64,000 nt of DNA from Macrostomum lignano (GCA_002269645.1 NIVC01002690.1:85474-149473), one strand, 5' to 3'. Counted from the stretch's first letter, positions 575 through 64,000 are shown. Notes: generated by a model not told the origin, from the sequence alone. Numbers and translations are program-made.

Positions 575-4840
<4,266 letters not shown>

Positions 4841-6523: not shown

Positions 6524-9500
6524 TCAGGTGTCGTTTTCATAGGTGTCAGTTTGCCTGCTGGCTTGGGACTGGACAGCTGCCTCAACCTGCATCTCCGCAT
6601 AGCTGCCACTGGGCCGAGCGCCGCTCCCAGCCGATGCGCCAGTCGACTGTCGCTGACGACGTGGCATGGGTGCCGGCGGCAGCGAGGATGTGGCTGGGAC
6701 TGCCGGTTGCTGCGGCGGCGGCGGTGCTGGCACCGTGGCGACTGAGCCAGGCGGCTGCGACCGAATAGTATCCAGCTCGAAGCTAGGGACCTGCGGCGGC
6801 TGAGGTTGCTGCGACGGCGGCTGCTTCCTGGAATGTTGAGAAGGGAAAATTCCTATCGCGCTTTTTTCTAGTAGTTTCTCTGTGTTCCTACTGACAGTAG
6901 GGTAAAAAAAGAAGTGTTTGATTTTCTTTAAAGGGTATTTCGATCAATGCCGAAATCGCACCGACGAAGAGCCTGAGATGTACTTTTGTCAAGACGACAG
7001 TTAAACCGTAGCCATGCAGCCACATGTACAGTAGAACGGCAAGTAGTCATGCCATTCCACTGACATGTACTCGTACATTGTAAGTATGCAGACACGCTTT
7101 CTCATTGTCAAGGCAGTGTACACAATCTCTGTGGTGCAACTTGAGCAGCCTTGGACCTCACCTGAGCTTCTGGCACTTCTGCCTCATCCAGAGCCAGATG
7201 TCGTTGGAGAAGTAGCCAGCGCAGATTCCGGCGGGCAGGAGCAGCAGAAGCAGCAGGAGCGCCAGGTGCGCATTCGATGCCGCAGGCGGCGGGCTGACTG
7301 CCGGCGTCAGGTTGACGCAGACGACAGACTCCGCGTCGCTGCAGTCGGCTCGCTGCCTGCAGGCCGCCTGAGCTGCCGGCTTCTCCTTGGCTTGAACTGA
7401 GTCCAGACTCCGCTGCATCTGCAGGCCTGCGGCTGCCGAATACTCGCCGATCTGCGCCAGTTCGTGGTGGGGCTTTAGAAAAAAATAATTAGTCCAATTT
7501 TCCTAAACTTTTCTCGTTTGATCACTCTTCAGTTTGTTCCAAGTTCTTCTTTGACTGTTTCAAGGCTGCTCCGAAAATACCCCTTTGCTTTCTACCGAAA
7601 TTCCCTCTCAATTCTTGCAAGATTCTTTCCGAAATTCCCTCTCGATTTTTGCAAGATTCTTTCCGAAATTCCCTCTCGATTTTTGCAATATTCTTTCCGA
7701 AATTCCCTCTCGATTTTTGCAATATTCTTTCCGAAATTCCCTCTCGATTTTTGCAATATTCTTTCCGAAATTCCCTCTCGATTTTTGCAATATTCTTTCC
7801 GAAATTCCCTCTCGATTTTTGCAATATTCTTTCCGAAATTCCCTCTCGATTTTTGCAATATTCTTTCCGAAATTCCCTCTCGATTTTTGCAAGATTCTTT
7901 CCGAAATTCCCTCTCGATTTTTGCAATATTCTTTCCGAAATTCCCTCTCGATTTTTTGCAAGATTCTTTCCGAAATTCCCTCTTGATTCTGGCAAGATTC
8001 TTTCCGAAATTCCCTCTCGACTTTTGCAAGATTCTTTCCGAAATTCCCTCTCGATTTTTTGCAAGATTCTTTCCGAAATTCCCTCTTGATTCTGGCAAGA
8101 TTCTTTCCGAAATTCCCTCTCGATTCTGGCAAGATTCTTTCTGAAATTCCCTCTCGACTTTTGCAATATTCTTTCCGAAATTCCCTCTCGATTTTTGCAA
8201 GATTCTTTCCGAAATTCCCTCTCGATTTTTTGCAAGATTCTTTTCGAAATTCCCTCTGGATTTTTGCAAGATTTTTTTCGAAATTCCCTCTCAATTTTTG
8301 CAAGATTTTTTCCAAAATTCCCTCTCGATTCTTGCAAGATTCTTTCCGAAATTCCCTCTCGATTCTGGCAAGATTCTTTCTGAAATTCCCTCTCGATTCT
8401 GGCAAGATTCTTTCCGAAATTCCCTCTCGATTTTTGCAATATTCTTTCCGAAATTCCCTCTCGATTTTTTGCAAGATTCGTTCCGAAATTCCCTCTCGAC
8501 TTTTGCAAGATTCTTTCCGAAATTCCCTCTCGATTTTTTGCAAGATTCGTTCCGAAATTCCCTCTCGATTTTTTGCAAGATTCTTTTCGAAATTCCCTCT
8601 CGATTTTTGCAAGATTTTTTTCGAAATTCCCTCTCGATTTTTGCAAGATTTTTTCCAAAATTCCCTCTCGATTTTTGCAAGATTCTTTCCGAAATTCCCT
8701 CTCGATTCTGGCAAGATTCTTTCCGAAATTCCCTCTCGATTCTGGCAAGATTCTTTCCGAAATTCCCTCTCGATTCTGGCAAGATTCTTTTCGAAATTCC
8801 CTCTCGATTTTTGAAAGATTCTTTGCGAAATTCTCTCTCGATTTTTGCAAGATTTTTTCAAAAATTCCCTTTTGATTTTTGCAAGATTCTTTACGAAATT
8901 CCCTTTCAATTCTTGCAAGATTCCTTTTGAAATTCCCTCGATTCTTCTAAGATTCTTCCAGTAATTCCGCTTTGATCCATCAAAGATTCGTTTTGATATT
9001 CCCTCGGGATTCCTTCCAGGATTGTTCAAATAATTTCCACAAATCCTTCTCAGCCTTCCCTCTACTTGGGAGATTTTCCCAAGGTAATCCATTGCAGGCA
9101 ATTCATTCATCAAAAGAAGCCCGCCATCAGATTTATCAGCATTGGCTGTCGGGCCGTCACCTTCCGCCAGCCCTCGGCGCCGCTGCCGAACTGCAGGACG
9201 TTCAGCCGGTTCGACCCGGTCCGGTCGTCACCGATTGGCCGATAGTCGCCGAATCGCCGCGGCTTGGCCGACGGGCCTCCTTTGGCGTCGCCGAAAAGAA
9301 TCCGGTTGCCGCGGGCCTTCATCGCCGCCCAGCTCGGATTCTGCAGCAGGGCGTCGCAAGCGGCCGTCGACGTCGCCGCTACGCAGACGTCCCGACGGTG
9401 GCGAGGCCGCCAAGCAGCAGGGCGGCGGCAGCGTTGGCTGCCAGCGGCGCCCGGCTGTCCAGGAAGCCGAGGCCGGGCAGCTCGCCGGGCGAGGCCGGTC

Positions 9501-24402: not shown

Positions 24403-41976
<17,574 letters not shown>

Positions 41977-47602: not shown

Positions 47603-47679
47603 ACATTTGACCTTCTTTGTCCGGGTTGACTAGGGGCGTTTGGGTAGTTTATTGGTCTTATCTGGATGGTCTGACAGAT

Positions 47680-49097
47680 GTGTCTTATCTATGGTCTGAC
47701 AGATGTGTCTCATCTATGGTCTGACAGATGTGTCTTATCTATGGTCTGACAGATGTGTCTTATCTATGGTCTGACAGATGTGTCTCATCTATGGTCTGAC
47801 ACATGTGTCTCATCTATGGTCTGACACGTGTCTCATCTATGGTCTGACAGATGTGTCTCATCTATGGTCTGACACGTGTCTCATCTATGGTCTGACAGAT
47901 GTGTCTCATTTATGGTCTGACAGATGTGTCTCATCTATGGTCTGACAGATGTGTCTCATCTATGGTCTGACAGATGTGTCTCATCTATGGTCTGACAGAT
48001 GTGTCTCATATATGGTCTGACAGATGTGTCTCATCTATGGTCTGACACATGTGTCTCATCTATGGTCTGACACGTGTCTCATCTATGGTCTGACAGATGT
48101 GTCTCATCTATGGTCTGACACATGTGTCTCATCTATGGTCTGACACGTGTCTCATCTATGGTCTGACAGATGTGTCTCATCTATGGTCTGACAGATGTGT
48201 CTCATCTATGGTCTGACAGATGTGTCTCATCTATGGTCTGACACGTGTCTCATCTATGGTCTGACAGATGTGTCTCATCTATGGTCTGACACATGTGTCT
48301 CATCTATGGTCTGACACGTGTCTCATCTATGGTCTGACAGAAGTGTCTCATCTATGGTCTGACAGATGTGTCTCATCTATGGTCTGACACGTGTCTCATC
48401 TATGGTCTGACAGATGTGTCTCATCTATGGTCTGACAGAAGTGTCTCATCTATGGTCTGACAGATGTGTCTCATCTATGGTCTGACAGAAGTGTCTCATC
48501 TATGGTCTGACAGATGTGTCTCATCTATGGTCTGACACGTGTCTCATCTATGGTCTGACAGATGTGTCTCATCTATGGTCTGACAGAAGTGTCTCATCTA
48601 TGGTCTGACAGATGTGTCTCATCTATGGTCTGACAGATGTGTCTCATCTATGGTCTGACACGTGTCTCATCTATGGTCTGACAGATGTGTCTCATCTATG
48701 GTCTGACACGTGTCTCATCTATGGTCTGACAGATGTGTCTCATCTATGGTCTGACAGAAGTGTCTCATCTATGGTCTGACAGAAGTGTCTCATCTATGGT
48801 CTGACAGATGTGTCTCATCTATGGTCTGACACGTGTCTCATCTATGGTCTGACACGTGTCTCATCTATGGTCTGACACGTGTCTCATCTATGGTCTGACA
48901 CGTGTCTCATCTATGGTCTGACACGTGTCTCATCTATGGTCTGACACGTGTCTCATCTATGGTCTGACACGTGTCTCATCTATGGTCTGACACGTGTCTC
49001 ATCTATGGTCTGACACGTGTCTCATCTATGGTCTGACACGTGTCTCATCTATGGTCTGACACGTGTCTCATCTATGGTCTGACAGATGTGTCTCATT
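47680..49097. repeat. 25/23-bp minisatellite downstream of KRTCAP2
   Basis: Units TCTATGGTCTGACAGATGTGTCTCA and TCTATGGTCTGACACGTGTCTCA. Confidence 0.96.
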
Positions 49098-50710: not shown

Positions 50711-53700
50711 ATGCTTCGGTCCGGCATTCGTGGCCTGCTGTCCTTGCCCGGCTCCGCCCTGCCCGGCGCCCTGTCGCTGCGCACCACCTACTCGGCGGCG
50801 CTGACCCTGCGAGTGCGCGAAAAGATCGCGGATACCCGTCGCCGATCGCAAGAGGGCGGCGGCGCCAAGCGAATCGACGCCCAGCACCAGAAGGGCAAGC
50901 TGACCGCCCGGGAGCGAATCGAGCTTCTCATGGACCCTGGCAGCTTTCGCGAATACGACGCCTTCGTTGAGCACGACTGCATCGACTTCGGCATGGAAAA
51001 GTCCAAGACCCCGGCCGACAGCGTGGTGACGGGGCACGGCCTCATCCACGGCCGGCCGGCGTTCGTGTTCAGCCAGGACTTCACCGTCTACGGTGGCAGC
51101 CTCTCACTGGCCCACGCCAAGAAGATTTGCAAGGTCTGCTCGCTGAAAAGTTTTCTTCCGGCATCTTTGTTACATTTTATTTGTGACGTCATTATTCATT
51201 ATGACGTCATTTTTATCTTGGGTTACGTAATCCACCCGTGCAAGCTAAATGGCGTCAAATTTAGAGATTCTTTGTCGAAGTGTCGGACTGTGAATAATTT
51301 TCAGAGAACTATTTCTTTTAGTTAAATCAGGGGTGGGAAAACTCCAACCTGTGGGCCATATGCGGCGCTATATCCGGCACTCAGGTCCTTGGACACTTTA
51401 GACTGGCAATCCGCTCTTCTCAGTTATCTCCTCTCCCCTCCTCCCTCTCCTCTTCTCTCCTCTCATCCCATGTAAACTCTCTTATCTTATCTCCTCTTCT
51501 CTCCCCCCCTATTTCCCCCCCCCCTATCTCGTATCTTTGATGACGTCATTGTAGTTCTTCTATCTATGACATCATCTTTGGCATGTTTTTTGTTGGATGA
51601 AGTCATCGTCGTCTAGTTATGACGTCATCGTGTCTACTAAGTCTCCCCCCATCGCCCCATAGGTGATGGACCAGGCCATGGTGGTCGGCGCCCCGGTCAT
51701 CGGCCTCAACGACAGCGGCGGCGCCCGCATCCAGGAGGGCGTGGCCAGCCTGGCCGGCTATGCCGACATCTTCGAGCGCAACGTGCTGGCCTCCGGCGTG
51801 GTGCCGCAGATCTCCATGATCATGGGACCCTGCGCCGGCGGCGCCGTGTACTCCCCTGCCCTCACCGACTTCATCTTCATGGTGGAGCAGTCCTCCTACC
51901 TGTTCATCACCGGCCCCGATGTGGTCAAGACTGTTACTGGTGAGCCCTGCTGCCCAGCGCCTTCGCCCGGCTCTCTGACTCTCCGTCTGACTCTGACTTC
52001 TCTCTTGCTGACTCTCTGACTCTGATATCCCTCTGTCTGACCCTCAGACTCGGACATCCTCAACCTGACTCTCTGACATCCTTCTACCCGACTCTCTGAC
52101 ATCCCTCTACCTGACTCTCTGACATCCCTCTACCTGACTCTCTGACATCCCTCTACCTGATTCTCTGACATCCCTCTACCTGACTCTGACATCCCTCTAC
52201 CTGACTCTGACATCCCTCTACCCGACTCTCTGACATCCCTCTATCTGACTCGAACATCCCTCTGACTCTGACATCCCTCTACCTGACTCTGACATCCCTC
52301 TACCTGACTCTGACATCCCTCTACCTGACTCTGACATCTCTCTATCTGACTCTCTAACATTCTCTAACTGACTCTGACATTCTCCATCTGACTCTCTAAC
52401 ATTCTCTATCTGACTCTGACATTCTCTATCTGACTCTCTGACATCCTCTATCTGACTCTCTGACATTCTCTATCTGACTCTCTAACATTTAATCTGCTCG
52501 CAGCAATCTTCACAGTTTATTTATCACAAACTCTGGGCCTTATGGTTTGCGTCTCCACCTCACCGTCGCTTCCTTCCCGCCGCACCCAGGCGAGAATGTC
52601 ACCCAGGAGGAGCTGGGCGGCTCCAAGACCCACACCGTCACCTCGGGCGTGGCGCATCGCGCCTTCGAGAACGACGTCGACGCTCTGGCTACCCTGCGCG
52701 AGCTGTACACCTTCTTGCCGCTGTCCAATCGCGACAGGGCCCCCATCCGCGAGTGTCAGGTGAGTCCGTTCTCGGAGTTCTCAACCTCTTGATCAATTTT
52801 CTAGCAGTTTTACACAGTTGTTGACTCGCTGACCCAGTTGTTGGGTCCCCCTGACACAGTTGTTGACTCGCTGACCCAGTTGTTAAGTCCCTGACCCAGT
52901 TGTTGACTCGCTGACCCAGTTTTCGAGTCCCTGACCCAGTTGTTGACTCGCTGACTCACTGTTTACTCACTGACCCAGTTGTTAAGTCCCTGACCCAGTT
53001 GTTGACTCGCTGACCCAGTTGTTGAGTCCCTGACCCAGTTGTTGACTCGCTGACCCAGTTGTTGAGTTCCTGACCCAGTTGTTTACTCGCTGACCCAGTT
53101 GTTGAGTTCCTGACTCAGTTGTTGACTCGCTGACCCAGTTGTTGAGTTCCTGACCCAGTTGTTGACTCGCTGACCTAGTTGTTGAGTCCCTGACCCTGTT
53201 GTTGACTCGCTGACCCAGTTGTTGAGTTCCTGACCCAGTTGTTGACTCGCTGACCCAGTTGTTGAGTCCCTGACCCAGTTGTTGACTCGCTGACTCACTC
53301 TCACTGTTTACTCACTGACCCAGTCGTTGACTCGCTGACCCAGTTGTTGACTCGCTGACCCAGTTGTTGAGTTCCTGACCCAGTTGTTGACTCGCTGACC
53401 TAGTTGTTGAGTCCCTGACCCAGTTGTTGACTTGCTGACCTAGTTGTTGACTCGCTGACGCGCTGATAAATAATAAATAATAAATATTATAATAATAAAA
53501 TAAATATAAATATTTTTATATTAAAACAACATTTAAACTTGTAGGGTATGGTAAGTGCTTGCAGTTCAAAATTCGCAATTCAAATCCTTTGTGGGAGGAG
53601 CAGACAGCTGATTTTATTTAAATCCACGTATATTAAAATAAATAAATAATGTAATAATTATGATTCGTACTGTGTGTGGGTACATATTTGCAATTTGATT

Positions 53701-55466
53701 CGCAAAAATTGCCCTTGACAAATGCATTGGCTTGTCTTAATTGACCTATCCCCTGATTCATTGACCCACTCACTTGCTCATTTATTGACCCAACCACTGA
53801 TTCATTGACCCACCCACTGATTCATTCACCCACCCACTGATTCATTGACCCACCGGCACCCACTGATTCATTCACCCACCCACTGATTCATTGACCCACC
53901 CACTGATTCATTGACCCACCGGCCACTCCCTGATTCATTGACCCACCGGGCACTCCCTGATTTTCATTGACCCACCGGCCACTCCCTAATTCATTGACCC
54001 ACCGGCCACTCCCTGATTTTCATTGACCCACCGGCCACTCCCTGATTTTCATTGACCCACCGGCCACTCCCTGATTTTCATTGACCCACCGGCCACTCCC
54101 TGATTCATTGACCCACCGGCCACTCCCTGATTCATTGACCCACCGGCACCCCTTGATTCATAGACCCACCGGCCACCCCCTGACTCATTGACCCACACGT
54201 TGACCCGCAGGACTCGCCAGACCGCGTGGTGCCGGCCCTGGACACGGTGGTGCCCCTGGAGACGACCAGCGCCTACGACATGCTCGACGTGATTCGCGGC
54301 ATCGTTGATGAAGAGGAGTTCTTTGAAATCATGCCCAAGCACGCCAAGAACATCGTGATCGGCTTCGGCCGGATGCACGGCCAGACGGTTGGTTTCCTTG
54401 GTAACCAGCCCAAGGTGGCCGCCGGCTGCCTGGACATCAACGCGTCCGTTAAGGGCGCCCGGTTTGTCCGCTTCTGCGACGCCTTCAACATCCCGCTGGT
54501 GACGCTGGTTGACGTGCCCGGCTTCCTGCCCGGCACCCAGCAGGAGTTCAATGGCATCATCAAGCACGGCGCCAAGCTGATCTACGCCTACGCCGAGGCC
54601 ACCGTGCCGAAAATTACCGTCATCACGCGCAAGGCCTACGGCGGCGCCTACTGCGTTATGAGCTCCAAGTGAGTTTTGCACGCCTGCTTTTAGTGTATGT
54701 GACTAGCAGACAAGCCCTCCTTTGGGGTTTCTGACGCTTACTCTAGCCTAGTGGTTAGAGCGTTGGACTCACAACTGAGTGGTCGGGGGTTCGATTCTCG
54801 ACCCAGTCGGAACAATTTGTGTCCTCAAGCAAGACACTTAACTCTGCATTACGTCAGTTCACCCAGCTGTAAAATGGGTACCAGCTTTAGCTGGGGTAAT
54901 TCAGGGTGTGTGGCGACCCCCCCCCCAGTCCTTGAATTATATTAATTTATGAAAAAAATCCAATCAGCTTGGTATATTTTTGATACACATCGGCAATAGA
55001 GCCCTCAAAAAGTGTCAATCATCTAGCTATATGCCGTACTGCAAAGTGTTTTTTAGATACATATCGAACATCTTTGCCTAGAGTCTGAAAAAAGGCTTGT
55101 AACATTACAGTATCAAAATCATCTCTCTGTGAAGTATGTTTTCGATACATATCGTCGCAAACTAAACTACGTCTACGTTTCAGGCACCTCCGCGGCGACG
55201 TGAACTACGCCTGGCCAAGCGCCGAAATCGCCGTGATGGGCGCCCAGGGTGCCGTTAAAATCATCTTCCGCGGCAAGGACCAGGCTCAGGCCGAGACTGA
55301 CTACGTTGACAAGTTCGCCAACCCGTTCCCGGCCGCTGTCCGCGGCTACGTTGACGATATTGTGCAGCCGCGCTTCACTCGCCAGCTGATCTGCCGCGAC
55401 CTGGAGCTGCTGCGCACCAAATCCCAGACCAACCCGTGGCGCAAGCATGGCAACATGCCGCTGTGA
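50711..55466 (+). CDS. PCCB: Propionyl-CoA carboxylase beta chain, mitochondrial (536 aa). Exons: 50711-51133, 51663-51939, 52590-52759, 54211-54668, 55184-55466.
   Basis: Presequence-like [12 protein letters not shown]. Motifs [89 protein letters not shown] and [10 protein letters not shown] are present. The frame is intact across all GT-AG introns. Confidence 0.98.
51970..52495. repeat. 19/21-bp minisatellite in PCCB intron 2
   Basis: Unit CTCTGACATCCCTCTACCTGA. Confidence 0.93.
52820..53458. repeat. 20-bp minisatellite with alternating units in PCCB intron 3
   Basis: GACCCAGTTGTTGACTCGCT alternates with GACCCAGTTGTTGAGT(C/T)CCT. Confidence 0.95.
53745..54200. repeat. ~20-30-bp minisatellite at the 3' end of PCCB intron 3
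   Basis: Unit CTGATTCATTGACCCACCGGCCACTCC and shorter variants. Confidence 0.9.
54740..54915 (+). mobile_element. tRNA-derived CORE-type SINE in PCCB intron 4
   Basis: Box A TAGCCTAGTGG (54744-54754) and box B GGTTCGATTCT (54788-54798). These are followed by GTGTCCTCAAGCAAGACACTTAAC...CTGTAAAATGGG, which resembles the MIR CORE domain (GTGACCTTGGGCAAGTCACTTAAC...CTGTAAAATGGG). Confidence 0.8.
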
Positions 55467-56952
55467 TGAGGAATGGACTCCGACCGTCTGCTATGATGCA
55501 GCTTGCGTTAAACTACTGACAGTAGCGTGTTCTCCCCGTAGGCTCTCTATATACGAGTACGAGTAGATAGTTTTTTATTGAGTAATAGTTATTGTCATAT
55601 TTGCACCGCATACTACTGATCCACTTTTTGACATTTTCTAATCCAAATTAAAAGATAATACTCGTTCGCTTTTTATATTACTTTTATTAGATAAAGTTGA
55701 TCAGCAGTATAATATAATTAGTTTGGCATTATAAATTAGCAGCTCCTATCTCTGGCTTCAAAGCCCAATAGCTACAGTTATAGATGTTGTGACGAAGATC
55801 TACTTATTATATCTTGCCATTTTTTGTTCGCTAGCAGCTCAACTTTGAGCACTAAAATAATTGTCAATGCTCCCAGACAGACAACTGACTGTCTCTGACT
55901 CTGTGTGGCTCAGTTCGGACCCCTTCTCTCCCCAATGTGTTTTTGTCTTTGTTCGTTTGCTTTCAGTAGACATCTGTGCAGTCTGTGGCCTAGCTCACTG
56001 CTCTAGACAATATTTATATTTGCAATGGATGGAAAATTCGTTAAACAGAAACACACTGCAACAAAGATCGCAAAGTCTTTGTCCTACTTCTAAAGAATCT
56101 GAATCCTACAGAAAAATACACGACCGCTCCGCATCGTTTCCAATTAGCTGTGTTGTTTTCAAGCTTAGAAGCATTAGTAAAAAAAATATTCAGTATCGGT
56201 CCGTTAGTTTTTTATTTTAAAGGCCCACTAAAAAAGCTTTTAACTATAATCCGTGTGCTTAAAAGCGCTGCATGTCTCAGAGCCGGCAACTTTTCTACAC
56301 CAATAGCAGCAATGCAAAGTCAGTATAAGCTCGATATAGCGTTGATGAGTCCGGGAGGCCGTGGACCCAGTGACCCCGGCAAATATCTGCACTGTGTCCA
56401 GCATGGCTGAGAGGCTGATGAGCGAGTGACCTACCAGTAGATTTAGTAGCTGAAGGCGGGAGTTGGATCCGGCAGGTGCATGCCATGCCATCTTGCAAGA
56501 ACAGCGAAAGCTGGACACCCGAGTATCTTGGTGCCGAACCATGCTGGTAAAATTTGCCTATGGCAGCGACCGAGGGATCTGGCTGGGAAATCCTCGCTGG
56601 TGATCAAGCATTGATCTACAGTATAGAAGTACGATCCGAAGAACGAGCGCCAGTCGATCAGCCGTTTGTACTTTTCGGACGAAACGACGAACGAATAATG
56701 CTTATAATATTATTTATTACTATAGTTAACAATTTTGTAAATAAAACCTTAGAGAATCATAAATAAATGATACGTATCAGGGACGTTCCTGAAAGCAAAA
56801 AAATTACGTATCGGATAGGTAATTTTGCTGCTCTGGCATAACTATATATTACATGAATGTGTGCAGTTACGTGCAGAACTTCGAACCAAGGACGACTTTA
56901 ATAGAAGGCGGGAAACTCCATTTCTTAGAAAATTTTAGAAGGCAGGTTTTCC

Positions 56953-57487
56953 CGAAAATATACACTACGGAGATCGAAGTTTTCATTTTTTCAGTACAAA
57001 AGTACTATTGCTTTTAATAGGATCGAGTGTTCATCTTTTGATATTTTGTGCCTTTCTTATTGCTCTATATATTCATAAAGCTTTTTATTCAATGAATTAG
57101 GATTCTACGTGAATTTTTTATTCTACGTACATTTTCCGTAACTAAAAATCATTAAAATGCATGGCACAGCTTGAATCTTTGGTTTTATAAATCTATTTTA
57201 TCATTCTTAGCTGACTGTATAACAAATATTTGTACCAGATGTGATAAAATAGATTCATAAAACCACAGATTCGAGATGTGCCATGCATTTTAATGATTTT
57301 TAGTTACGGGAAATGTACGTAGAATAAAAAATTCACATAGAATCCTAATTCATTGAATAAAAAGCTTTATGAATATATCAATAGAGCAATAAGAAAGGCA
57401 CAAAATATCAAAAGATGACACTGGATCCGCAATACGATTTTTGTGCTGAAAAAATGTAAACTTCCGATCTCCGTATTGTATTTTTCG
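56953..57487. mobile_element. Foldback/MITE-like element with ~250-bp inverted arms and a 38-bp spacer
   Basis: About 57027-57203 is a near-perfect reverse complement of 57242-57421. Looser pairing extends out to 56953/57487. No TSD was identified. Confidence 0.85.
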
Positions 57488-58672
57488 TAGTTTTATTTTT
57501 CCGTAGTGTATTAATTAAGGTCCTGTTTTAGTTAGAATAAGACAGCTGGCAAAGTGTGAACAGAAAAGTTCTCGAATATCGTAACGTTCATAATTCTGTT
57601 GGTTATAGACCAAGAAACTTTTGCACATTCATGATAACTTTAAATTCTTTGGAGTTAAATCTGAGTTAAATATAACAAAAATGCTTTCTTTTTGGAATAT
57701 GCACTTGTCAAATACTTTTTTAACGAAATTTAAGTAGCTATTTGATTTAATGAAAGTAAAAAATCATATAGTTAATTTATTATTTCCATTGTCAGTGTCA
57801 AGATAAAGGTACCAACTTAGTTTTTTCTGTGCATGCGATTTTTTGTATCCTAGTAGCTTTTGCGACTGTTACTTTTTAGATTTCCATATATTTATTTTAT
57901 GCAATAGAGAAATTTAAGGAAAAAGCTATACACAGGTACTTCAAAGTCTTTTTTCTTAGTCTCGATCTGATAATAAAAATCTTGGATTAAACTGCATATA
58001 AATGTATTCTAACAGAGAGATGCTTAAAAATTAATTTACTATAAGTCCTAAACCAGGTAAGCCTTTTTGGCGAGCTGATGTGGCTTTCAATTGAGGATAT
58101 TGTAGACTAAAAAAATAATTCGTTTTTTGTCCTAACTTCTACATAGCATCATATTCTTAAGAAAAATGACATGTAAAGTATAGTTTTGTTTTAGAATCTA
58201 TTTCTAATTGGCTATATGGCTATATCTATTTGGCTATACTTGTACATTGTACTCTTTGCCTTGAATTGCCTTTTAGAGCAGACAGCTGGCCCAGAACTTT
58301 TCTATAACAAAAATTACTCTGGATTTTTTAATTTTTTTCCTGAAAGTATTTAATATTTATTTTTTATATTTATATTTATATATATCTAAAATTTTCATTT
58401 TATAAATAATAATATATAATATAATATATAAATAATAATATATAATATATTATGAAAATTCTCACTCTTTAAAAAAAGTTTTATTGTTATTAAAATAAAT
58501 TTGTTTTATTCAAATTTTGCTAAATAATATTTCATTAATTTTGAAGCAAAAATTAAAACAGCTAACAAAAGATCAAAAAAATGAACACACAACTTTTAAA
58601 CAAGTATACAAATTGAAACCTTCAGTAATTTTTTAATTTCTTTTTAAATTTTTTATTGAAATTTTTAGCCTA

Positions 58673-61600
58673 ATGGACCAGTCTTCACGTCCGGAATTGC
58701 CTGTGGATTTCTATTCCGCCCTGCAAGAATCAAAGCAGAGCCTTGACACTGAATTTGAGAACAATACAAATCTGCGGCACCATGTGCGTCAGCTGGTGCA
58801 AGCTTTGAAGTGCAGGACAGATGATGCGGCAGCTGCAAGGCAGCGCATGGCAGCTGCCATTGCTGCTGAGAACATCCTGCCAGACTTGAGCAAGCTGTCG
58901 ATGGCCTGTCTTAGCAAAGGTGAAATGGCAGGATTATAATTTATTTTTAGACTCCTTCATTCGCTTGAAGGGGTGTGTATGGCCTACAGCAGGACCACCA
59001 ATAACATCTAGTTTGACACCTGGTCTGGTGCCCCTGTCACTTGATCTGACTCTTCTGACACCTATTTAGCAGTCCTGACACCTGATTTAGCAGTCCTGAC
59101 ACCTGATTTAGCAGTCCTGACACCTGATTTAGCAGTCCTGACACCTGATTTAGCAGTCCTGACACCTGATTTAGCAGTCCTGACACCTGATTTAGCATTC
59201 CTGACACCTGATTTAGCAGTCCTGACACCTGATTTAGCAGTCCTGACACCTGATTTAGCAGTCCTGACACCTGATTTAGCAGTCCTGACACCTGATTTAG
59301 CATTCCTGACACCTGATTTATCAGTCCTGACACCTGATTTAGCAGTCCTGACACCTGATTTAGCATTCCTGACACCTGATTTATCAGTCCTGACACCTGA
59401 TTTAGTAGTTTTGAAGCCCAATTTAGCATTCCTGACACACCCGGTCGGTAGTTCTGACATCCTAGTTGTCTCCTGACGCACCCAATTTGGCACTCCCGAT
59501 CCCCCTATAATCTGACAACCTGTGAACCCCAAACGCAGCTGGTCAGCAGCAGCTCACCAAAGGCGAGTTCCAGCTGCTGCTGTGCACCCTGCACCTCTGC
59601 CACACCTGCACGGACGCCAGCCCTGAGTTCTCGGCTCATCTGGTCGGCTCGGGTGACGCTCTGCAGCTGCTGAAGTCCCTGCTGGCCGCGTGGGTGCAGC
59701 CACACCTGGAGAAACGGCTTGAGCAGCAGTCGGTCAGAGGCCTCAAAAGCTGCTTGAGCACCGTGTACAACGCGCTGTGGCAGGGCGAGGCCCGTGAACT
59801 CTGCAGCCTGCTGGCACTGAAACAAATCGGCATTGTGGAAGCAGCCAACCAGCTGTTTCAACTGTCTGACAATAAGTACATCGTCCAGTTCAGCTTCCTC
59901 ATTCTGGTGTACAGCTGCTCGGATGATGAGGCAGCCAGATTCCTGCAGCCGGGCGACTCCGGCCAGCAGCAGGAGCGGGTCGGGCGCCAGTTGCGCCAGC
60001 TGGTGGCCGGGCTGGGCCGGGCCTGCGCCGCCAAGCACCTGAGAACAGAAGACGGCTTTAGCATGGATGAGCTGCTTGCCTGTTAGCGGCGGGTCTCTGT
60101 GGAATCTTTGTTGTTGAGTTGCAGACTTTGTAGTTGAGCTTGGACAAGCAATAGACTCTCCGGTGGTGCATAAATATTTGTAGAAGCTGGGCTCTGTTGG
60201 AGTCGAAAAATGAAGACAGTTGATTGAGTGGAAAATTCCGCACATTTATTTACTACTCTACTAATAGCAAAAATACAGGGATAAAAGCGTTAAATAAAAC
60301 ACGAGTACATAATGCAAGTATTTTCTATATGCTACTAATATAAAATTTTCCAGTGAATTTTCTTAGAAATTAATCTGCACTACACGGCCCCACTTTCCCG
60401 CCGCAGGCGTCCGGCGGTTCAGCCGCCGCCCCGACCACCGCCCGCTGGTGCTCCGCCAGGACTGTCTGGCTGAGCTGCAGCGGCTGCTGCAGACGGCGGC
60501 CGAGCGACCCGCCAGTCAGATCGTTGCCGCCCTCGAAATCGCGCTCTCGCTTTCATTGCACCCGACATGCGTCGACGCAGTCAGGCGGAGCCTCGGCTCG
60601 GAGCTGCAGTCGCTGGTAGTTGAGGGCGGCGGGCGGCTGGCGGACGCTGTCCGGTGCCTCTTGGGTGAGGATGATGGACAGCTGCAACCAGGGCGTCGCC
60701 ATGGACTTTATGGTGGTGGGAAACAGTCGGGAATTCTACATGACTAAATTCCTACATTAATTTGGGAATCGGTGTTGTTGGCACTCATTTTGGCGCCGCA
60801 GGCACTCATTTTGGCGCGACAGACAGGCACTCATTTTAGAGATAGGGATTAGAGAGGAATAGAGATAGGATTGAGATAGGAAGCTGTCGGTTTTACAAGA
60901 ACTATGATTGGGCATTGCCAATTTCTCACAGTTTGAAAAAAATTGCTGTTTTTTCTTTTGCTTTCTACTTAAAGTAGTCTGTCGCTGATTATTTTAGAAT
61001 CGCCAGAGTCTGACTCGAAAGAGCAGCCGCGGTGGACAACTGATGCTTTTTCCGGTCCAAATGAAGGTCAGCCATCGCTTTCGCTTTGTCGAGTCGATTG
61101 TTGAATGTTTTTAGATAAGTTGTTTAATCAAGTTTTCTGATACCTGGTATTTTAGAACTCCGAACTTCACAACGCAAAGCAAGGAGCATAAATGAGAGAC
61201 AGTCGAATTCTCAGGCATCAGGTGAGAACTGGGAAAGAACTGGGTTTTTTTCTTCTCAGAACTTCTCAGAACTGGGTGGGCCCTGTCTTCGTTTCAACAA
61301 GTTAGCGGACTCAAAACGATCTGCTTTAGACTGCGGGGCTCCGTAAAGCGAGGCTGTAACTATACTGTAAACGAAGCTGTAGCTTCTCTACGCGAGGCTG
61401 TTGCACTGTAGACAAGGCTGTAACTGCTGTAGCTAAGCGAGGCTGTAACTACTGTAATCGAAGATTTAATTGCTGTAGGCGAGGCTGTAATTCCTGTAGG
61501 CAAGACCGTAACTACTGTAGGTAAGGCTGTAACTACTTTAGGTGAGGCTGTAACTACTGTAGATAAGGCTGTAACTACTGTAGTCGAGGCTGTAACTACT

Positions 61601-63109
61601 GTAGACGAGGCTGTAACTACTGTAGATAAGGCTGTAACTACTGTAGTCGAGGCTGTAACTACTGTAGTCGAGGATAGGCTTACTATCTGCTGTCACGCAC
61701 CGATCATAAAAGCCTACCAATTGAATCGATTCCCAGGCCAGAAACCCAGCGTTCTCCCATTGGAAAATGGCGCAGCCAGCGCCTACCTGGTGCTGAGCTG
61801 GTCCAGACAAGATTCCGATGCCGCATTTGCCAGATGGCTGGTCGCTAAGCTGAATGAAAACTGGCATCGGGTGAGCGCAGAGAAATCCACATCGTATTGA
61901 AGCTGTCTAGCCAGCCTGCAGTTGTCCGGGTCTGTCTAGCCAGCCTGCGGTTGTCCGGGTCTGTCTTAGTTAGCTTGTAGCTGTCCGAGTCTGTCTTAGT
62001 TAGCTTACAGCTGTCCGAGTCTGTATTAGTTAGCTTACAGCTGTCCGAGTCGGTCTTAGTTAGCTTACAGCTGTCCGAGTTTGTCTTAGCTAGCTTTCAG
62101 CTGTCCGAGTCTGTCTTAGTTAGCTTACAGCTGTCCGAGTTTGTCTTAGCTAGCTTACAGCTGTCCGAGTCTGTCTTAGTTAGCTTACAGCTGTCCGAGT
62201 TTGTCTTAGCTAGCTTTCAGCTGTCCGAGTTTGTCTTAGCTAGCTTTCAGCTGTCCGAGTCTGTCTTAGCTAGCTTACAGCTGTCCGAGTCTGTCTAGTC
62301 AGCCTATAACCATTCGCTTGTTTTTGCTCTCCAATTACTTTGTAGCAACGTTTCAAAACAATAGTTCCTTTGGCCTTTTTCAAATATTTCCCCAGACTAT
62401 CGACTTGAGCACAGACTCAACTGCCGGACTCATCGATGGCTGCCGTGCCGTGATTCTGTGCGTCTCCAAGCCATACGAATTAAACAGCCTGTGCGAGTTT
62501 GGTGAGCTCGGCATCCTTGATAACTTACTTCAATCTGAATTATTATTTTCTCATAAAAAAGAAACAATACGCTAAAAAGCTACTTGTTAGTAGTTAACTC
62601 GCTCACTAAATCGGTAAAATCTGGAATTTTTAATTTCCAGAAGCGCACCGGGCGGAGGTGCTGGAAAAACCGCTGGTGCCTCTGCTGTGCGGCGAAGGCT
62701 ACCAACCGGGAAGCTGGCTGAGCCCCATCCTGGCCAGGTACTCAGCTCAGGCCGACCTGCTAATTGACTTCTCTAAACAGAGGGACCGCGCCAAGTCATT
62801 CAGCACTTTAATCGGTCGCCTTAACGTCAGCTTGTCGCCACGTGGACAAAGACTGCTGCGCCAGCAGTTTCAGCAGTAGCTGTCGGTGACTTCAGCGGCT
62901 GGAGCTCCGCCGAGGTCGGCAGGTGGCTGTCCGGGCACCAGCTTCCAGCTCAGCGGCTGGGCTACCTGAACGGCCGGCACCTGGAATTCCTGGTGGAGCT
63001 GAAGCGGGAAGCGCCCGAGGCATTTTACAGGATGCTGCGAGAGGACCTACGGCTGGACAACTTCGAGTTGGTGTTTCGCTTCACCACTGCGGTGAAGAGC
63101 CTCGGCTGA
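58673..63109 (+). CDS. ARM/HEAT-like helical region, TIR domain and C-terminal SAM-like domain (~630 aa). Exons: 58673-58919, 59539-60081, 60407-60664, 60998-61066, 61156-61221, 61737-61870, 62396-62501, 62641-63109 (1-bp deletion near 62838).
   Basis: Leu-rich helical N-terminal exons. TIR elements are YLVLSWSR, FARWLVAKLNENW, GCRAVILCVSKPYELNSLCEFEAHRAEVLEKPLVPLLCGEGYQPGSWL and LIDFS. The SAM-like region reads WSSAEVGRWL..LNGRHLEFLVELKREAPEAFYRMLREDL..FRFTTAVKSL. All splice phases are consistent. Confidence 0.82.
59070..59460. repeat. 21-bp minisatellite in TIR-gene intron 1
   Basis: Unit AGTCCTGACACCTGATTTAGC. Confidence 0.95.
61345..61672. repeat. 21-bp minisatellite in TIR-gene intron 5
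   Basis: Unit ACTGTAGACGAGGCTGTAACT. Confidence 0.9.
61905..62300. repeat. 30-bp minisatellite in TIR-gene intron 6
   Basis: Unit CTGTCCGAGTCTGTCTTAGTTAGCTTACAG. Confidence 0.94.
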
Positions 63110-63134
63110 GAGGGCGCTCGGAAATGTAGATGAA

Positions 63135-64000
63135 GATGGGAAGCTGGGGAAGATGTGACGAGAGGGAGATAAAAGGATGAAAGAGATGGGAGGATGAGTG
63201 AGATGGGAGGATGAGGTAGATGGAAGGATGAAGGAGATGGGAGGATGAGGTAGATGGGAGGATGAGGGAGATGGGAGGATGGGGGAGATGGGGATGAGGG
63301 AGATGTGAGAATGAGGGAGATGTGAGAATGAGGAGATGAGAGGATGAGTGAGATGGGAGGATGAGGGAGATAGGAGGATGGGGGAGATGAGAGGATGAGG
63401 GAGATGGGAGGATGAGGGAGATGGGAGTATGAGGGAGATAGGAGGATGAGAGAGATGAGAGGATGAGGGAGATGGGAGGATGGGGGAAATGAGAGGATGA
63501 GTGAGATGAGAGGATGAGAGAGATGAGAGGATGAGGGAGATAGGAGGATGGGGGAGATGAGAGGATGAGGGAGATGGGAGGATGGGGGAAATGAGAGGAT
63601 GAGTGAGATGGGAGTATGGTTGAGATGAGAGGATGAGAGAGATGAGAGGATGAGGGAGATGGGAGGATGGGGGAGATGAGAGGATGGGGGAGATGAGAGG
63701 ATGAGGGAGATGGAGGATGGGGAGATGGAGGATGGGGGAGATGAGAGGATGAGGGAGATGGGAGGATGGGGGAGATGGGAGGATGGTTGAGATGAGAGGA
63801 TGAGAGAGATGAGAGGATGAGGGAGATAGGAGGATGGGGAGATGAGAGGATGAGGGATGGGAGTATGAGGGAGATAGGAGGATGGTTGAGATGAGAGGAT
63901 GAGAGAGATGAGAGGATGAGGAGATGGGAGGATGGGGGAAATGAGAGGATGAGTGAGATGGGAGTATGAGGGAGATGTGAGGATGGTTGAGATGAGAGGA
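63135..64000. repeat. 17-bp purine-rich minisatellite running off the window end
   Basis: Unit GAGATGGGAGGATGAGG and variants. Confidence 0.94.

What the first reader, a model, noticed from the sequence alone, without database searches (positions are those of the whole stretch)
58673..63109. ARM-like/TIR/SAM-like protein: SARM1-type parts in a different order
Seen: a helical N-terminal region, a low-complexity linker (two micro-exons of 69 and 66 nt), a TIR domain and a C-terminal SAM-like domain. Established: SARM1 is ARM-SAM-SAM-TIR, with ARM autoinhibition and SAM oligomerisation activating a TIR NADase. ARM-TIR proteins have been reported in other invertebrates but are functionally little characterised. 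Inference: this is a candidate oligomerising innate-immune or cell-death effector. None of the supplied ORFs show the TIR because it is split across three exons.
Basis: partly seen in the sequence, partly recalled or inferred. Interest (0 to 1): 0.72.

Follow-up and report, generated by a model that had tools for sequence, protein, structure and literature searches.

The report
Flatworm ARM–TIR–SAM-like gene, frameshifted copy
This is a real eight-exon gene of the flatworm Macrostomum lignano that encodes an armadillo-repeat, TIR and SAM-like protein from a widespread but uncharacterised animal family; it is already in GenBank as a hypothetical protein, and in this contig a one-base gap, probably an assembly error, cuts off the SAM-like end.

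Summary
There are eight GT–AG exons from 58673 to 63109 on the + strand, including the 69-nt and 66-nt micro-exons, and the TIR is split over three exons.

The window is the last 64 kb of contig NIVC01002690.1 of the Macrostomum lignano assembly Mlig_3_7. Read as it stands, the gene gives the deposited 553-aa protein PAA55904.1 exactly. That protein has ARM and TIR but no SAM, because one G is missing at 62825/62826 and the TIR frame stops at TAG 62877-79. Restoring that G gives the deposited 630-aa protein PAA46322.1 exactly, from a near-identical sister contig. The two contigs differ almost only by small indels, mostly bases missing from the window. The frameshift is therefore most likely an assembly error.

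Profile and structure searches confirm all three domains:
- **ARM:** classical armadillo repeats.
- **TIR:** a TIR fold with the catalytic glutamate (E475) conserved.
- **SAM-like:** a C-terminal domain that matches SAM domains only at family level.

The same architecture occurs in molluscs, a brachiopod, amphioxus, a hemichordate and a brittle star. It is not a SARM1 orthologue.

The most likely function is an NAD+-cleaving TIR enzyme that is regulated by ARM and assembled by SAM. This is inferred, not shown. The finding is a new member of a known kind, of modest interest.

The parts
58673..58919 (+). Exon 1: start codon and first ARM-region helices (aa 1-82 plus one base)
   Evidence: ATG at 58673 and donor GTGAAA at 58920. 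The model translates exactly to P0180/PAA55904.1.
59539..60081 (+). Exon 2: ARM-repeat region
   Evidence: Acceptor cag|CTGG and donor GTTAGC. It is 98.9% identical to the L001 exon. The AF2 helical repeats have pLDDT of 80-96.
60407..60664 (+). Exon 3: end of the ARM-repeat region (the ARM fold spans about aa 10-336, 58700-60624)
   Evidence: Acceptor cag|GCGT and donor GTGAGG. Foldseek matched ARM-repeat proteins.
60998..61066 (+). Exon 4: 69-nt micro-exon, phase 1-1, part of the disordered linker
   Evidence: Flanked by tag| and |gtcagc. It encodes SPESDSKEQPRWTTDAFSGPNE, which is present in P0180, P0181 and P0001. pLDDT is below 50 over aa 346-376 and 389-408 and low between them.
61156..61221 (+). 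Exon 5: 66-nt micro-exon, phase 1-1, part of the disordered linker; skipped in two older UniProt models
   Evidence: Flanked by tag| and |gtgaga. It is absent from P0003 and P0184, which read SGPNE|GQKPSV.
61737..61870 (+). Exon 6: start of the TIR (strand A and helix A: AYLVLSW...AKLNENWHR)
   Evidence: Pfam TIR_2 matches aa 414-531. The AF2 strand and helix pattern fits.
62396..62501 (+). Exon 7: middle of the TIR (strand B to helix C), ending with the first base of the Glu475 codon
   Evidence: It is 100% identical to the L001 exon.
62641..63109 (+). Exon 8: rest of the TIR, a short linker and the SAM-like domain. As it stands the frame breaks at 62825/62826. The TIR frame stops at TAG 62877-62879 and the SAM-like frame stops at TGA 63107-63109.
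62501..62642 (+). Codon of the predicted catalytic glutamate E475, split by intron 7 (G at 62501, AA at 62641-62642)
   Evidence: E475 is invariant in the 29-sequence family alignment. It aligns with SARM1 E642. Table S2 of preprint 10.64898/2026.04.20.719644 calls it the active-site GLU187 of A0A1I8IT36.
62825..62826 (+). Site of the missing G (ttaac-gtcagc here, ttaacGgtcagc in L001 and L002), which separates the TIR frame from the SAM-like frame
   Evidence: Alignments. Restoring one G gives P0181/PAA46322.1 exactly.
62885..63106 (+). SAM-like domain (aa 557-630 of the 630-aa form), intact as an ORF but out of frame in this contig
   Evidence: The family C-terminal profile matched PDB SAM domains (SMS1 3e-5, Shank2 2.5e-4, ETV6, SARM1 8e-3). 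Weak Pfam SAM_3, SAM_1 and SAM_2 hits occurred in 20, 14 and 10 of 39 homologues. AF2 gives a helical bundle with pLDDT of about 95.
59055..59438 (.). 21-nt tandem array (about 18 copies) inside intron 1
61349..61673 (.). 21-nt tandem array (about 15 copies) inside intron 5
61919..62303 (.). 30-nt tandem array (about 13 copies) inside intron 6

Best explanation
The region is one copy of a Macrostomum lignano gene (locus tag BOX15_Mlig026716g2) for a cytosolic three-domain protein. The domains are about 330 residues of armadillo repeats, a roughly 60-residue disordered linker encoded mainly by two cassette-type micro-exons, a TIR domain that keeps the catalytic glutamate, and a C-terminal SAM-like helical domain. 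The protein belongs to a bilaterian-wide family of ARM-TIR proteins that carry this same C-terminal domain. The one-base deletion that separates the TIR from the SAM-like domain in this contig is most likely an assembly indel, so the real product is the 630-aa form.

Proposed mechanism (inferred). The TIR is an NAD+-cleaving enzyme that produces cADPR-type nucleotides and/or depletes NAD+. It becomes active when TIR domains are brought together. The SAM-like domain provides self-association, and the ARM repeats bind a ligand or partner and hold the TIR in check until it is triggered. The logic is like SARM1's, but the lineage is separate and the domain order differs. M. lignano lacks Toll-like receptors, so the protein would act independently of them.

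Confidence differs by layer: about 0.95 for gene identity and architecture, about 0.8 for the frameshift being an artefact, and about 0.4-0.45 for the enzymatic, oligomerising mechanism.
For: Gene and identity. The window from 52673 to 64000 is 100% identical to the end of NIVC01002690.1. The as-is translation equals PAA55904.1, and the translation with one G restored equals PAA46322.1. The exon structure equals the annotated P0001 gene in L001.

Artefact. The sister contig L002 is 99.8% identical over 11.3 kb. In the base-by-base listing of 17 difference sites, most are small indels and most of those are bases missing from the window next to a base of the same kind. Only one lies in an exon. 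The window is at a contig end. The SAM-like ORF is intact, with 0 nonsynonymous and 2 synonymous differences from the L001 copy. Three of the four annotated copies are 630 aa.

Domains. TIR_2 matches at E = 8.9e-6 over profile positions 3-121 of 122, and 40 of 40 homologues hit TIR_2 while 23 of 40 hit Arm. The full-length AF2 model has pLDDT 79, and Foldseek matched SARM1 and ARM-repeat proteins. The TIR-SAM model has pLDDT 82, and its top 50 hits are all TIR domains. The family profile matched Vac8 at 8e-27 and beta-catenin and APC. The C-terminal profile matched SAM domains.

Catalysis. E475 is invariant and aligns with the catalytic Glu of SARM1/TIR-1 and with Cat1 and RPS4. The preprint's structure-based call for this very protein fragment is GLU, at 0.2 A C-alpha distance. 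An oyster TIR that makes cADPR in a Glu-dependent way matches the family profile at hhalign probability 99.9%, E = 9e-37.

Breadth. 284 cluster representatives reach E <= 1e-3, and most matches run from the TIR to the C-terminal end. Taxa include molluscs, a brachiopod, a flatworm, amphioxus, a hemichordate and a brittle star. TLRs are absent from M. lignano (PMC8609888).
Against: No activity, oligomerisation or expression data exist for this protein. Four isolated TIR domains from the main cluster of the family (amphioxus, gar, ascidian, Chlamydomonas) gave no detectable product in the E. coli assay of the preprint. The M. lignano TIR is a divergent member: it scores below the Pfam gathering threshold on its own (26.6 against 28 bits), has a BB-loop/helix-B region about 7 residues shorter, and has a 5-residue insertion before strand E. 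The SAM assignment for this sequence rests on family profiles and a predicted structure; it has no direct Pfam or PDB sequence hit, and no Foldseek test of that domain alone was possible. The ARM domain shows no specific similarity to the SARM1 ARM. The two gene copies differ by 19 nonsynonymous and 6 synonymous changes, which shows no clear purifying selection on the ARM region. The frameshift could be real in this copy.
Confidence: 0.6

Rival explanations
1. The frameshift is real. This copy (BOX15_Mlig026716g2) is a recently disabled or neo-functionalised paralogue that makes a 553-aa ARM-TIR protein without the SAM-like domain, for example a non-oligomerising, dominant-negative or decoy form.
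For: The sequence as deposited and annotated reads this way. M. lignano carries several near-identical copies of the gene, so loss of one would be tolerated. A second change (C to T at 62877) creates the TAG in the shifted frame.
Against: The window and L002 differ almost only by small indels, mostly bases missing from the window in short-repeat or homopolymer contexts, which is the pattern of long-read assembly errors near a contig end. The T at 62877 is also present in the intact copy P0181, where it simply encodes Val554, so it is not a linked disabling change. The SAM-like ORF carries no damaging change.
Confidence: 0.18
2. The TIR is a non-enzymatic scaffold. The protein is an adaptor that nucleates TIR-TIR or SAM-SAM signalling assemblies, as MyD88 and MAL do, rather than cleaving NAD+.
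For: Four isolated TIRs of the main family cluster were inactive in the bacterial assay. Foldseek hits include the scaffold TIRs MAL, MyD88 and TRIF at scores similar to those of enzymatic TIRs. The BB-loop is shortened in the M. lignano protein.
Against: The catalytic Glu is invariant across the aligned family and was called structurally for this protein. The best PDB sequence matches are enzymatic TIRs: Cat1, SARM1/TIR-1 and RPS4. An oyster homologue is active. M. lignano has no TLRs to adapt. Isolated TIRs often need forced oligomerisation to be active (established for SARM1 and plant TIRs; my own knowledge).
Confidence: 0.3
3. It is the flatworm SARM1 orthologue with shuffled domains.
For: Full-length human SARM1 is the top Foldseek hit for the whole model. 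The family profile touches both the SAM and the TIR of SARM1/TIR-1.
Against: The domain order and number differ: one C-terminal SAM-like domain instead of two central SAMs. TM-scores to SARM1 are only 0.22-0.25. The ARM profile matches Vac8 and beta-catenin far better than it matches anything in SARM1. The TIR matches SARM1 only at hhalign E = 1e-6, against 9e-37 for an oyster ARM-TIR. The same architecture coexists with true SARM1 in other phyla: ARM-TIR and SARM are counted separately in oyster and Aplysia.
Confidence: 0.03

Closest known systems
Invertebrate 'ARM-TIR' proteins. These are counted in oyster and Aplysia immune-gene surveys (PMC4346834, PMC9334734). They correspond to the large TIR cluster represented by Arion vulgaris A0A0B7AZE4 in preprint 10.64898/2026.04.20.719644, and probably to one of the 'ecTIR-DC' families of Gerdol et al. 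2017, a paper that was not readable here.
   Same: N-terminal armadillo repeats are followed by a TIR_2-type TIR with the motif ...S..C..EA... that carries the catalytic Glu. The proteins are cytosolic. Homology is contiguous from the ARM through the TIR to the C-terminal domain. Other M. lignano paralogues (A0A1I8GCB8, A0A1I8H3D3) sit in that cluster.
   Different: This gene is a divergent branch. It has only 17-26% identity to other members, its TIR forms its own 40%-identity cluster in the preprint (A0A1I8IT36), its BB-loop is shorter, and it lacks the MG...S N-terminus that 26 of 40 relatives have. The published surveys do not annotate the C-terminal SAM-like domain; Table S2 lists only the 'TPR' clan for these proteins.
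SARM1 / TIR-1 / dSarm (ARM-SAM-SAM-TIR NAD+ hydrolase)
   Same: The same three kinds of domain occur in one cytosolic polypeptide. The catalytic Glu of the TIR aligns. SARM1 is the top whole-model Foldseek hit. The regulatory logic is plausibly the same: ARM restraint, SAM assembly, TIR catalysis.
   Different: The domain order is ARM-TIR-SAM, with a single SAM-like domain at the C-terminus. The ARM is of the classical Vac8/beta-catenin type. Sequence similarity is weak. It is not an orthologue.
Crassostrea (Magallana) gigas A0A8W8J0Z4, a 639-aa TIR protein shown to make cADPR (preprint Table S4)
   Same: Its TIR matches the family profile over its full length (hhalign probability 99.9%, E = 9e-37). 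Its size and TIR position (369-497 of 639) are similar. There is apparently an intron at the catalytic-Glu position, as in this gene.
   Different: It belongs to a different TIR cluster (representative K1QUY0). I could not retrieve its full sequence, so its N- and C-terminal domains were not checked.

Membership tests
TIR domain superfamily (Pfam TIR_2, PF13676) | Profile match over the whole domain | tested here: met
   The window protein scores E = 8.9e-6 and 26.6 bits, just under the 28-bit gathering score, but covers profile positions 3-121 of 122. All 40 aligned homologues hit TIR_2, with a best E of 5e-26.
TIR domain superfamily (Pfam TIR_2, PF13676) | Flavodoxin-like alternating strand/helix fold | tested here: met
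   The AF2 TIR-SAM model has pLDDT 82. All top 50 Foldseek PDB hits are TIR domains, with a target-normalised TM-score of about 0.6 to TIR-only chains.
Enzymatic (NAD+-cleaving) TIRs | Conserved glutamate on helix C in the catalytic pocket | tested here: met
   E475 is invariant in the family alignment. It aligns with SARM1 E642. It is called 'GLU 187, 0.2 A' for A0A1I8IT36 in preprint Table S2.
Enzymatic (NAD+-cleaving) TIRs | Demonstrated NAD+ consumption or cADPR-isomer production | not testable with these tools
   This needs biochemistry. In the preprint the cluster of this protein is marked 'not tested', four TIRs of the main ARM-TIR cluster were inactive, and one oyster homologue was active.
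Armadillo-repeat proteins | Tandem three-helix ARM repeats forming a superhelix | tested here: met
   The protein has no Pfam Arm hit on its own. However, phmmer alignments run contiguously from the N-terminal region into homologues that do hit Arm, in 23 of 40 cases. The family profile matched Vac8 at 8e-27, plakoglobin, beta-catenin and APC. Foldseek of the AF2 model matched designed ARM proteins and APC-ARM with a target-normalised TM-score of 0.54-0.59.
SAM domain superfamily | Sequence-profile match to SAM families | tested here: inconclusive
   The window sequence alone has no Pfam or PDB hit. The family C-terminal profile (39 sequences) hits SAM domains in the PDB: SMS1 3e-5, Shank2 2.5e-4, TEL/ETV6, SARM1 8e-3. 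Of 39 homologues, 20, 14 and 10 weakly hit SAM_3, SAM_1 and SAM_2. The assignment holds at family level and is transferred to this protein by alignment (23-40% identity).
SAM domain superfamily | Compact five-helix bundle of about 70 residues | tested here: inconclusive
   AF2 predicts four DSSP helices over aa 564-629 with pLDDT of about 95.
SAM domain superfamily | Self-association (polymer or ring) | not testable with these tools
   This needs SEC-MALS, cryo-EM or a multimer prediction.
SARM1 orthologues | Architecture ARM - SAM - SAM - TIR | tested here: not met
   The order here is ARM - linker - TIR - SAM-like, with a single SAM-like domain.
SARM1 orthologues | Closer in sequence to SARM1 than to other TIR or ARM proteins | tested here: not met
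   The TIR matches SARM1 at hhalign E = 1e-6, against 9e-37 for an oyster ARM-TIR. The ARM profile's best hits are Vac8 and beta-catenin, not SARM1.
Invertebrate ARM-TIR family (with C-terminal SAM-like domain) | Contiguous homology across ARM, TIR and the C-terminal domain to members from other phyla | tested here: met
   phmmer found 284 representatives at E <= 1e-3. For example, Lingula P0066 aligns over query 60-620, and many others over 446-629. Taxa are listed.
Invertebrate ARM-TIR family (with C-terminal SAM-like domain) | Assignment to a numbered ecTIR-DC family (Gerdol et al. 2017) | not testable with these tools
   The defining paper and its sequences are not in the library.

The most novel reading that the evidence does not exclude
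The C-terminal SAM-like domain, which current domain pipelines do not annotate, is a genuine oligomerisation module. If so, the ARM-TIR-SAM family would be a second, SARM1-independent and bilaterian-wide lineage of self-assembling TIR NAD+-processing enzymes with a permuted domain order. In a TLR-less flatworm it would act as a stand-alone sensor and effector for immunity or cell death. The four 'inactive' isolated TIRs in the 2026 survey would then be explained by the missing SAM-driven assembly.
Probability: 0.3. Interest if true: 0.6.

Novelty: new member of a known kind. Interest (0 to 1): 0.3.

Why it matters
TIR domains are turning out to be enzymes across bacteria, plants and animals. 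So far the only animal TIR with a worked-out mechanism of autoinhibition plus oligomerisation is SARM1.

If the family described here really combines an ARM sensor or brake, a catalytic TIR and a SAM-type assembly domain in a different order, it offers an independent natural test of how such enzymes are switched on. It would also offer a candidate TLR-independent immune or cell-death effector in a regenerating flatworm that is experimentally tractable by RNAi and transgenesis.

There is a practical point too. The GenBank model for this copy (553 aa) is probably truncated by an assembly indel. The SAM-like domain is also missed by standard annotation across the whole family.

Tried and rejected
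- **Direct searches with the window protein:** a single-sequence PDB search found nothing, and Pfam found nothing on the isolated SAM-like peptide. Family profiles were needed.
- **Rescuing the frame by splicing:** I listed every GT..AG pair between 62700 and 62905 that joins the TIR and SAM frames. I rejected them all. The 23-71-nt candidates lie in GC-rich, coding-like sequence with poor signals. The 101-167-nt ones would delete strand E and helix E of the TIR, which are conserved in the family. The annotated paralogues show an uninterrupted exon here.
- **Word-indexed homologue search with the family alignment:** this returned only 3 proteins, so taxonomy had to come from cluster look-ups.
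- **Full-length sequence of the cADPR-active oyster protein:** the search gave only exon-sized ORF fragments, so its architecture was not checked.
- **Literature searches:** the locus tags gave nothing. Gerdol et al. 2017 (ecTIR-DC classification) is not in the library.
- **SARM1 orthology:** considered and rejected; see the rival explanations.
- **Prokaryotic tools:** the promoter/terminator scan and the tRNA and Rfam searches were not used, because this is a spliced animal gene.


Full report
**What is in the sequence**

The region 58.6-63.1 kb has GC-rich blocks separated by AT-rich or repeat-filled stretches. Joining the blocks at GT-AG boundaries gives eight exons:
- 58673-58919
- 59539-60081
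- 60407-60664
- 60998-61066 (69 nt)
- 61156-61221 (66 nt)
- 61737-61870
- 62396-62501
- 62641-63109

The TIR is indeed spread over exons 6, 7 and 8.

**Source and existing annotation**

A protein search identified the organism as the flatworm Macrostomum lignano. Window positions 52673-64000 are 100% identical to the last 11.3 kb of contig NIVC01002690.1 of assembly GCA_002269645.1. The window therefore ends at a contig end, inside a 17-nt tandem array.

The spliced translation of the window as it stands equals GenBank PAA55904.1 (BOX15_Mlig026716g2, 553 aa), residue for residue. A homeologous locus, L001 on NIVC01000022.1, is about 93-95% identical across introns and flanks and 95-100% identical in exons. 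It has the same exon structure and encodes the 630-aa protein P0001. The gene model is therefore real and already deposited, named only 'hypothetical protein' in GenBank and 'TIR domain-containing protein' in UniRef.

**The frameshift**

In the window the TIR frame runs into TAG at 62877-79, and the SAM-like ORF, which ends at TGA 63107-09, is in a different frame. Compared with L001, the window lacks one G (ttaac-gtcagc against ttaacGgtcagc) at 62825/62826. Putting that G back gives a 630-aa protein identical to PAA46322.1 (BOX15_Mlig004768g1), which is encoded on a third contig, L002.

Several observations bear on whether the deletion is real:
- L002 and the window are 99.8% identical over 11.3 kb.
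- The alignment lists 17 difference sites. Most are small indels, mostly bases missing from the window beside a base of the same kind or inside short repeats.
- Only one of these sites is in an exon, and it is the frameshift.
- The window lies at a contig end.
- The SAM-like ORF is intact, with 0 nonsynonymous and 2 synonymous differences from L001.
- Three of the four annotated copies are 630 aa.

Together these make an assembly indel the most likely cause (about 0.8). A real, very recent truncation of this copy cannot be excluded without reads. No plausible intron rescues the frame.

**Domains**

*TIR.*
- Pfam TIR_2 matches aa 414-531 over the whole profile, at 26.6 bits against a 28-bit cut-off.
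- All 40 aligned homologues hit TIR_2.
- An AlphaFold2 model of the TIR-SAM part has pLDDT 82. Foldseek returned TIR domains for all top 50 PDB hits, including Hydra TRR-2, SPARTA TIR-APAZ, MAL, SARM1, RPS4, RUN1 and MyD88.

*ARM.*
- The protein itself has no Pfam Arm hit.
- phmmer alignments run contiguously from about residue 60-140 through the TIR into homologues from molluscs and Lingula, and 23 of 40 such homologues hit Arm.
- The family profile matches Vac8 (8e-27), ODAD2/ARMC4, plakoglobin, beta-catenin and APC.
- The full-length model (pLDDT 79, pTM 0.69) matches designed ARM proteins and APC-ARM. Full-length human SARM1 is the top hit, but at a low TM-score.

*Linker.* Residues 346-408, encoded by the end of exon 3, the two micro-exons and the start of exon 6, are predicted to be disordered.

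*SAM-like.*
- The sequence alone hits nothing.
- A 39-sequence profile of the C-terminal 80 residues hits SAM domains of SMS1 (3e-5), Shank2 (2.5e-4), TEL/ETV6, liprin-beta and SARM1 (8e-3).
- Twenty, 14 and 10 of the 39 homologues weakly hit Pfam SAM_3, SAM_1 and SAM_2.
- The model shows a compact helical bundle with pLDDT of about 95.

I accept 'SAM-like' at family level. The fold of this domain alone was not searched.

**The family**

An exhaustive phmmer search found 284 cluster representatives at E <= 1e-3. In most of the best 150, the match runs from the TIR to within a few residues of the C-terminus. Named members come from several phyla:
- other M. lignano paralogues
- gastropods and bivalves
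- the brachiopod Lingula
- amphioxus
- a hemichordate
- a brittle star

All are 'uncharacterized'. These correspond to the 'ARM-TIR' proteins counted in oyster and Aplysia immune surveys.

In the 2026 preprint on animal TIR enzymes, other M. lignano paralogues fall in a large cluster whose only extra annotation is the TPR/ARM clan. The preprint's pipeline did not report the C-terminal domain.

The M. lignano protein studied here is a divergent branch, with 17-26% identity to relatives. Its BB-loop/helix-B region is about 7 residues shorter, and it has a 5-residue insertion before strand E. It also lacks the MG...S N-terminus seen in 26 of 40 relatives.

**How it probably works**

Shown:
- The helix-C glutamate E475 is invariant in the family alignment.
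- E475 aligns with the catalytic Glu of SARM1/TIR-1.
- The preprint independently called it the active-site residue, at 0.2 A C-alpha distance, for A0A1I8IT36. That entry is a fragment model of this same gene or a near-identical copy.
- Among solved structures, the closest by sequence profile are the enzymatic TIRs Cat1, SARM1/TIR-1 and RPS4.
- An oyster TIR that makes cADPR in a Glu-dependent way fits the family profile at E = 9e-37.
- M. lignano has no TLRs.

Inferred: the TIR cleaves NAD+, the SAM-like domain self-associates and so brings TIRs together, and the ARM repeats sense or restrain.

Against:
- Four isolated TIRs of the main cluster were inactive in E. coli.
- The TIR here is divergent.
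- Nothing is known about expression.

I put the enzymatic, oligomerising model at about 0.4-0.45, a pure scaffold role at about 0.3, and the rest as unknown.

**Comparison with SARM1**

The protein works like SARM1 in outline, but it is not a member of that family. The domain order and SAM number differ. The ARM is of the classical type. TIR similarity is weak. True SARM genes are counted alongside ARM-TIR genes in other lophotrochozoans.

**Verdict**

- The gene is already in public databases, and its class (ARM-TIR) is known.
- The modest new points are the conserved C-terminal SAM-like domain and the probable mis-annotation of this copy.
- I rate the interest at 0.3.

Noticed in passing
window 50800-55466 (+): The upstream neighbour is a multi-exon propionyl-CoA carboxylase beta-chain-type gene (Carboxyl_trans). 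An older UniProt model (A0A1I8IYH0, P0002) fuses its frameshifted C-terminus to the N-terminus of the ARM-TIR gene. This is either an annotation artefact or read-through.
   Followed up: partly
window 62501 | 62641-62642: The codon of the catalytic Glu475 is split by intron 7. Genomic ORF fragments of the cADPR-active oyster homologue begin right at the equivalent 'EAAYASS', which suggests that the intron position is conserved between flatworm and mollusc.
   Followed up: partly
window 60998-61066 and 61156-61221: Both micro-exons are multiples of 3 and phase 1-1, so they are cassette-type. Two older UniProt models (A0A1I8IT36, A0A1I8F3X2) skip the 66-nt exon, so the linker length may be varied by alternative splicing.
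   Followed up: partly
alignment A1 (family members from other species): Twenty-six of 40 family members start with MG[SACTG]xx[ST/C], an N-myristoylation-type (often also Cys-containing) N-terminus. The M. lignano protein starts MDQSS. The best PDB sequence match of the family's ARM region is Vac8, which is itself an acylated ARM protein (my own knowledge).
   Followed up: no
window 58673-63109 compared with L001 6001-10682: The two gene copies differ by 19 nonsynonymous and 6 synonymous substitutions. Seven of the nonsynonymous changes are in the first 51 codons, and none is in the SAM-like region. The numbers are too small for a test, but there is no sign of strong purifying selection on the ARM part.
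   Followed up: partly
window 58667-58672: An AG acceptor preceded by a T-run lies 4 nt upstream of the start codon (tttttag|cctaATG). This would suit an SL trans-splice site, which M. lignano is known to use (my own knowledge). It was not tested.
   Followed up: no
whole window, e.g. 26702-30087, 2173-3326, 7595-8968, 24675-25965, 36616-37950, 47666-49096, 63134-64000: The window is packed with long minisatellite arrays of 14-59-nt units and 3.4 kb of (CTGT)n. Three introns of the ARM-TIR gene each carry a 21- or 30-nt array. The contig ends inside a 17-nt array.
   Followed up: no
window 56360-63919 compared with L002: The sister contig NIVC01004930.1 differs from the window almost only by 1-4-nt indels, mostly bases missing from the window. 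The end of this contig looks less well polished, so other frames in the window may also be broken artificially.
   Followed up: yes
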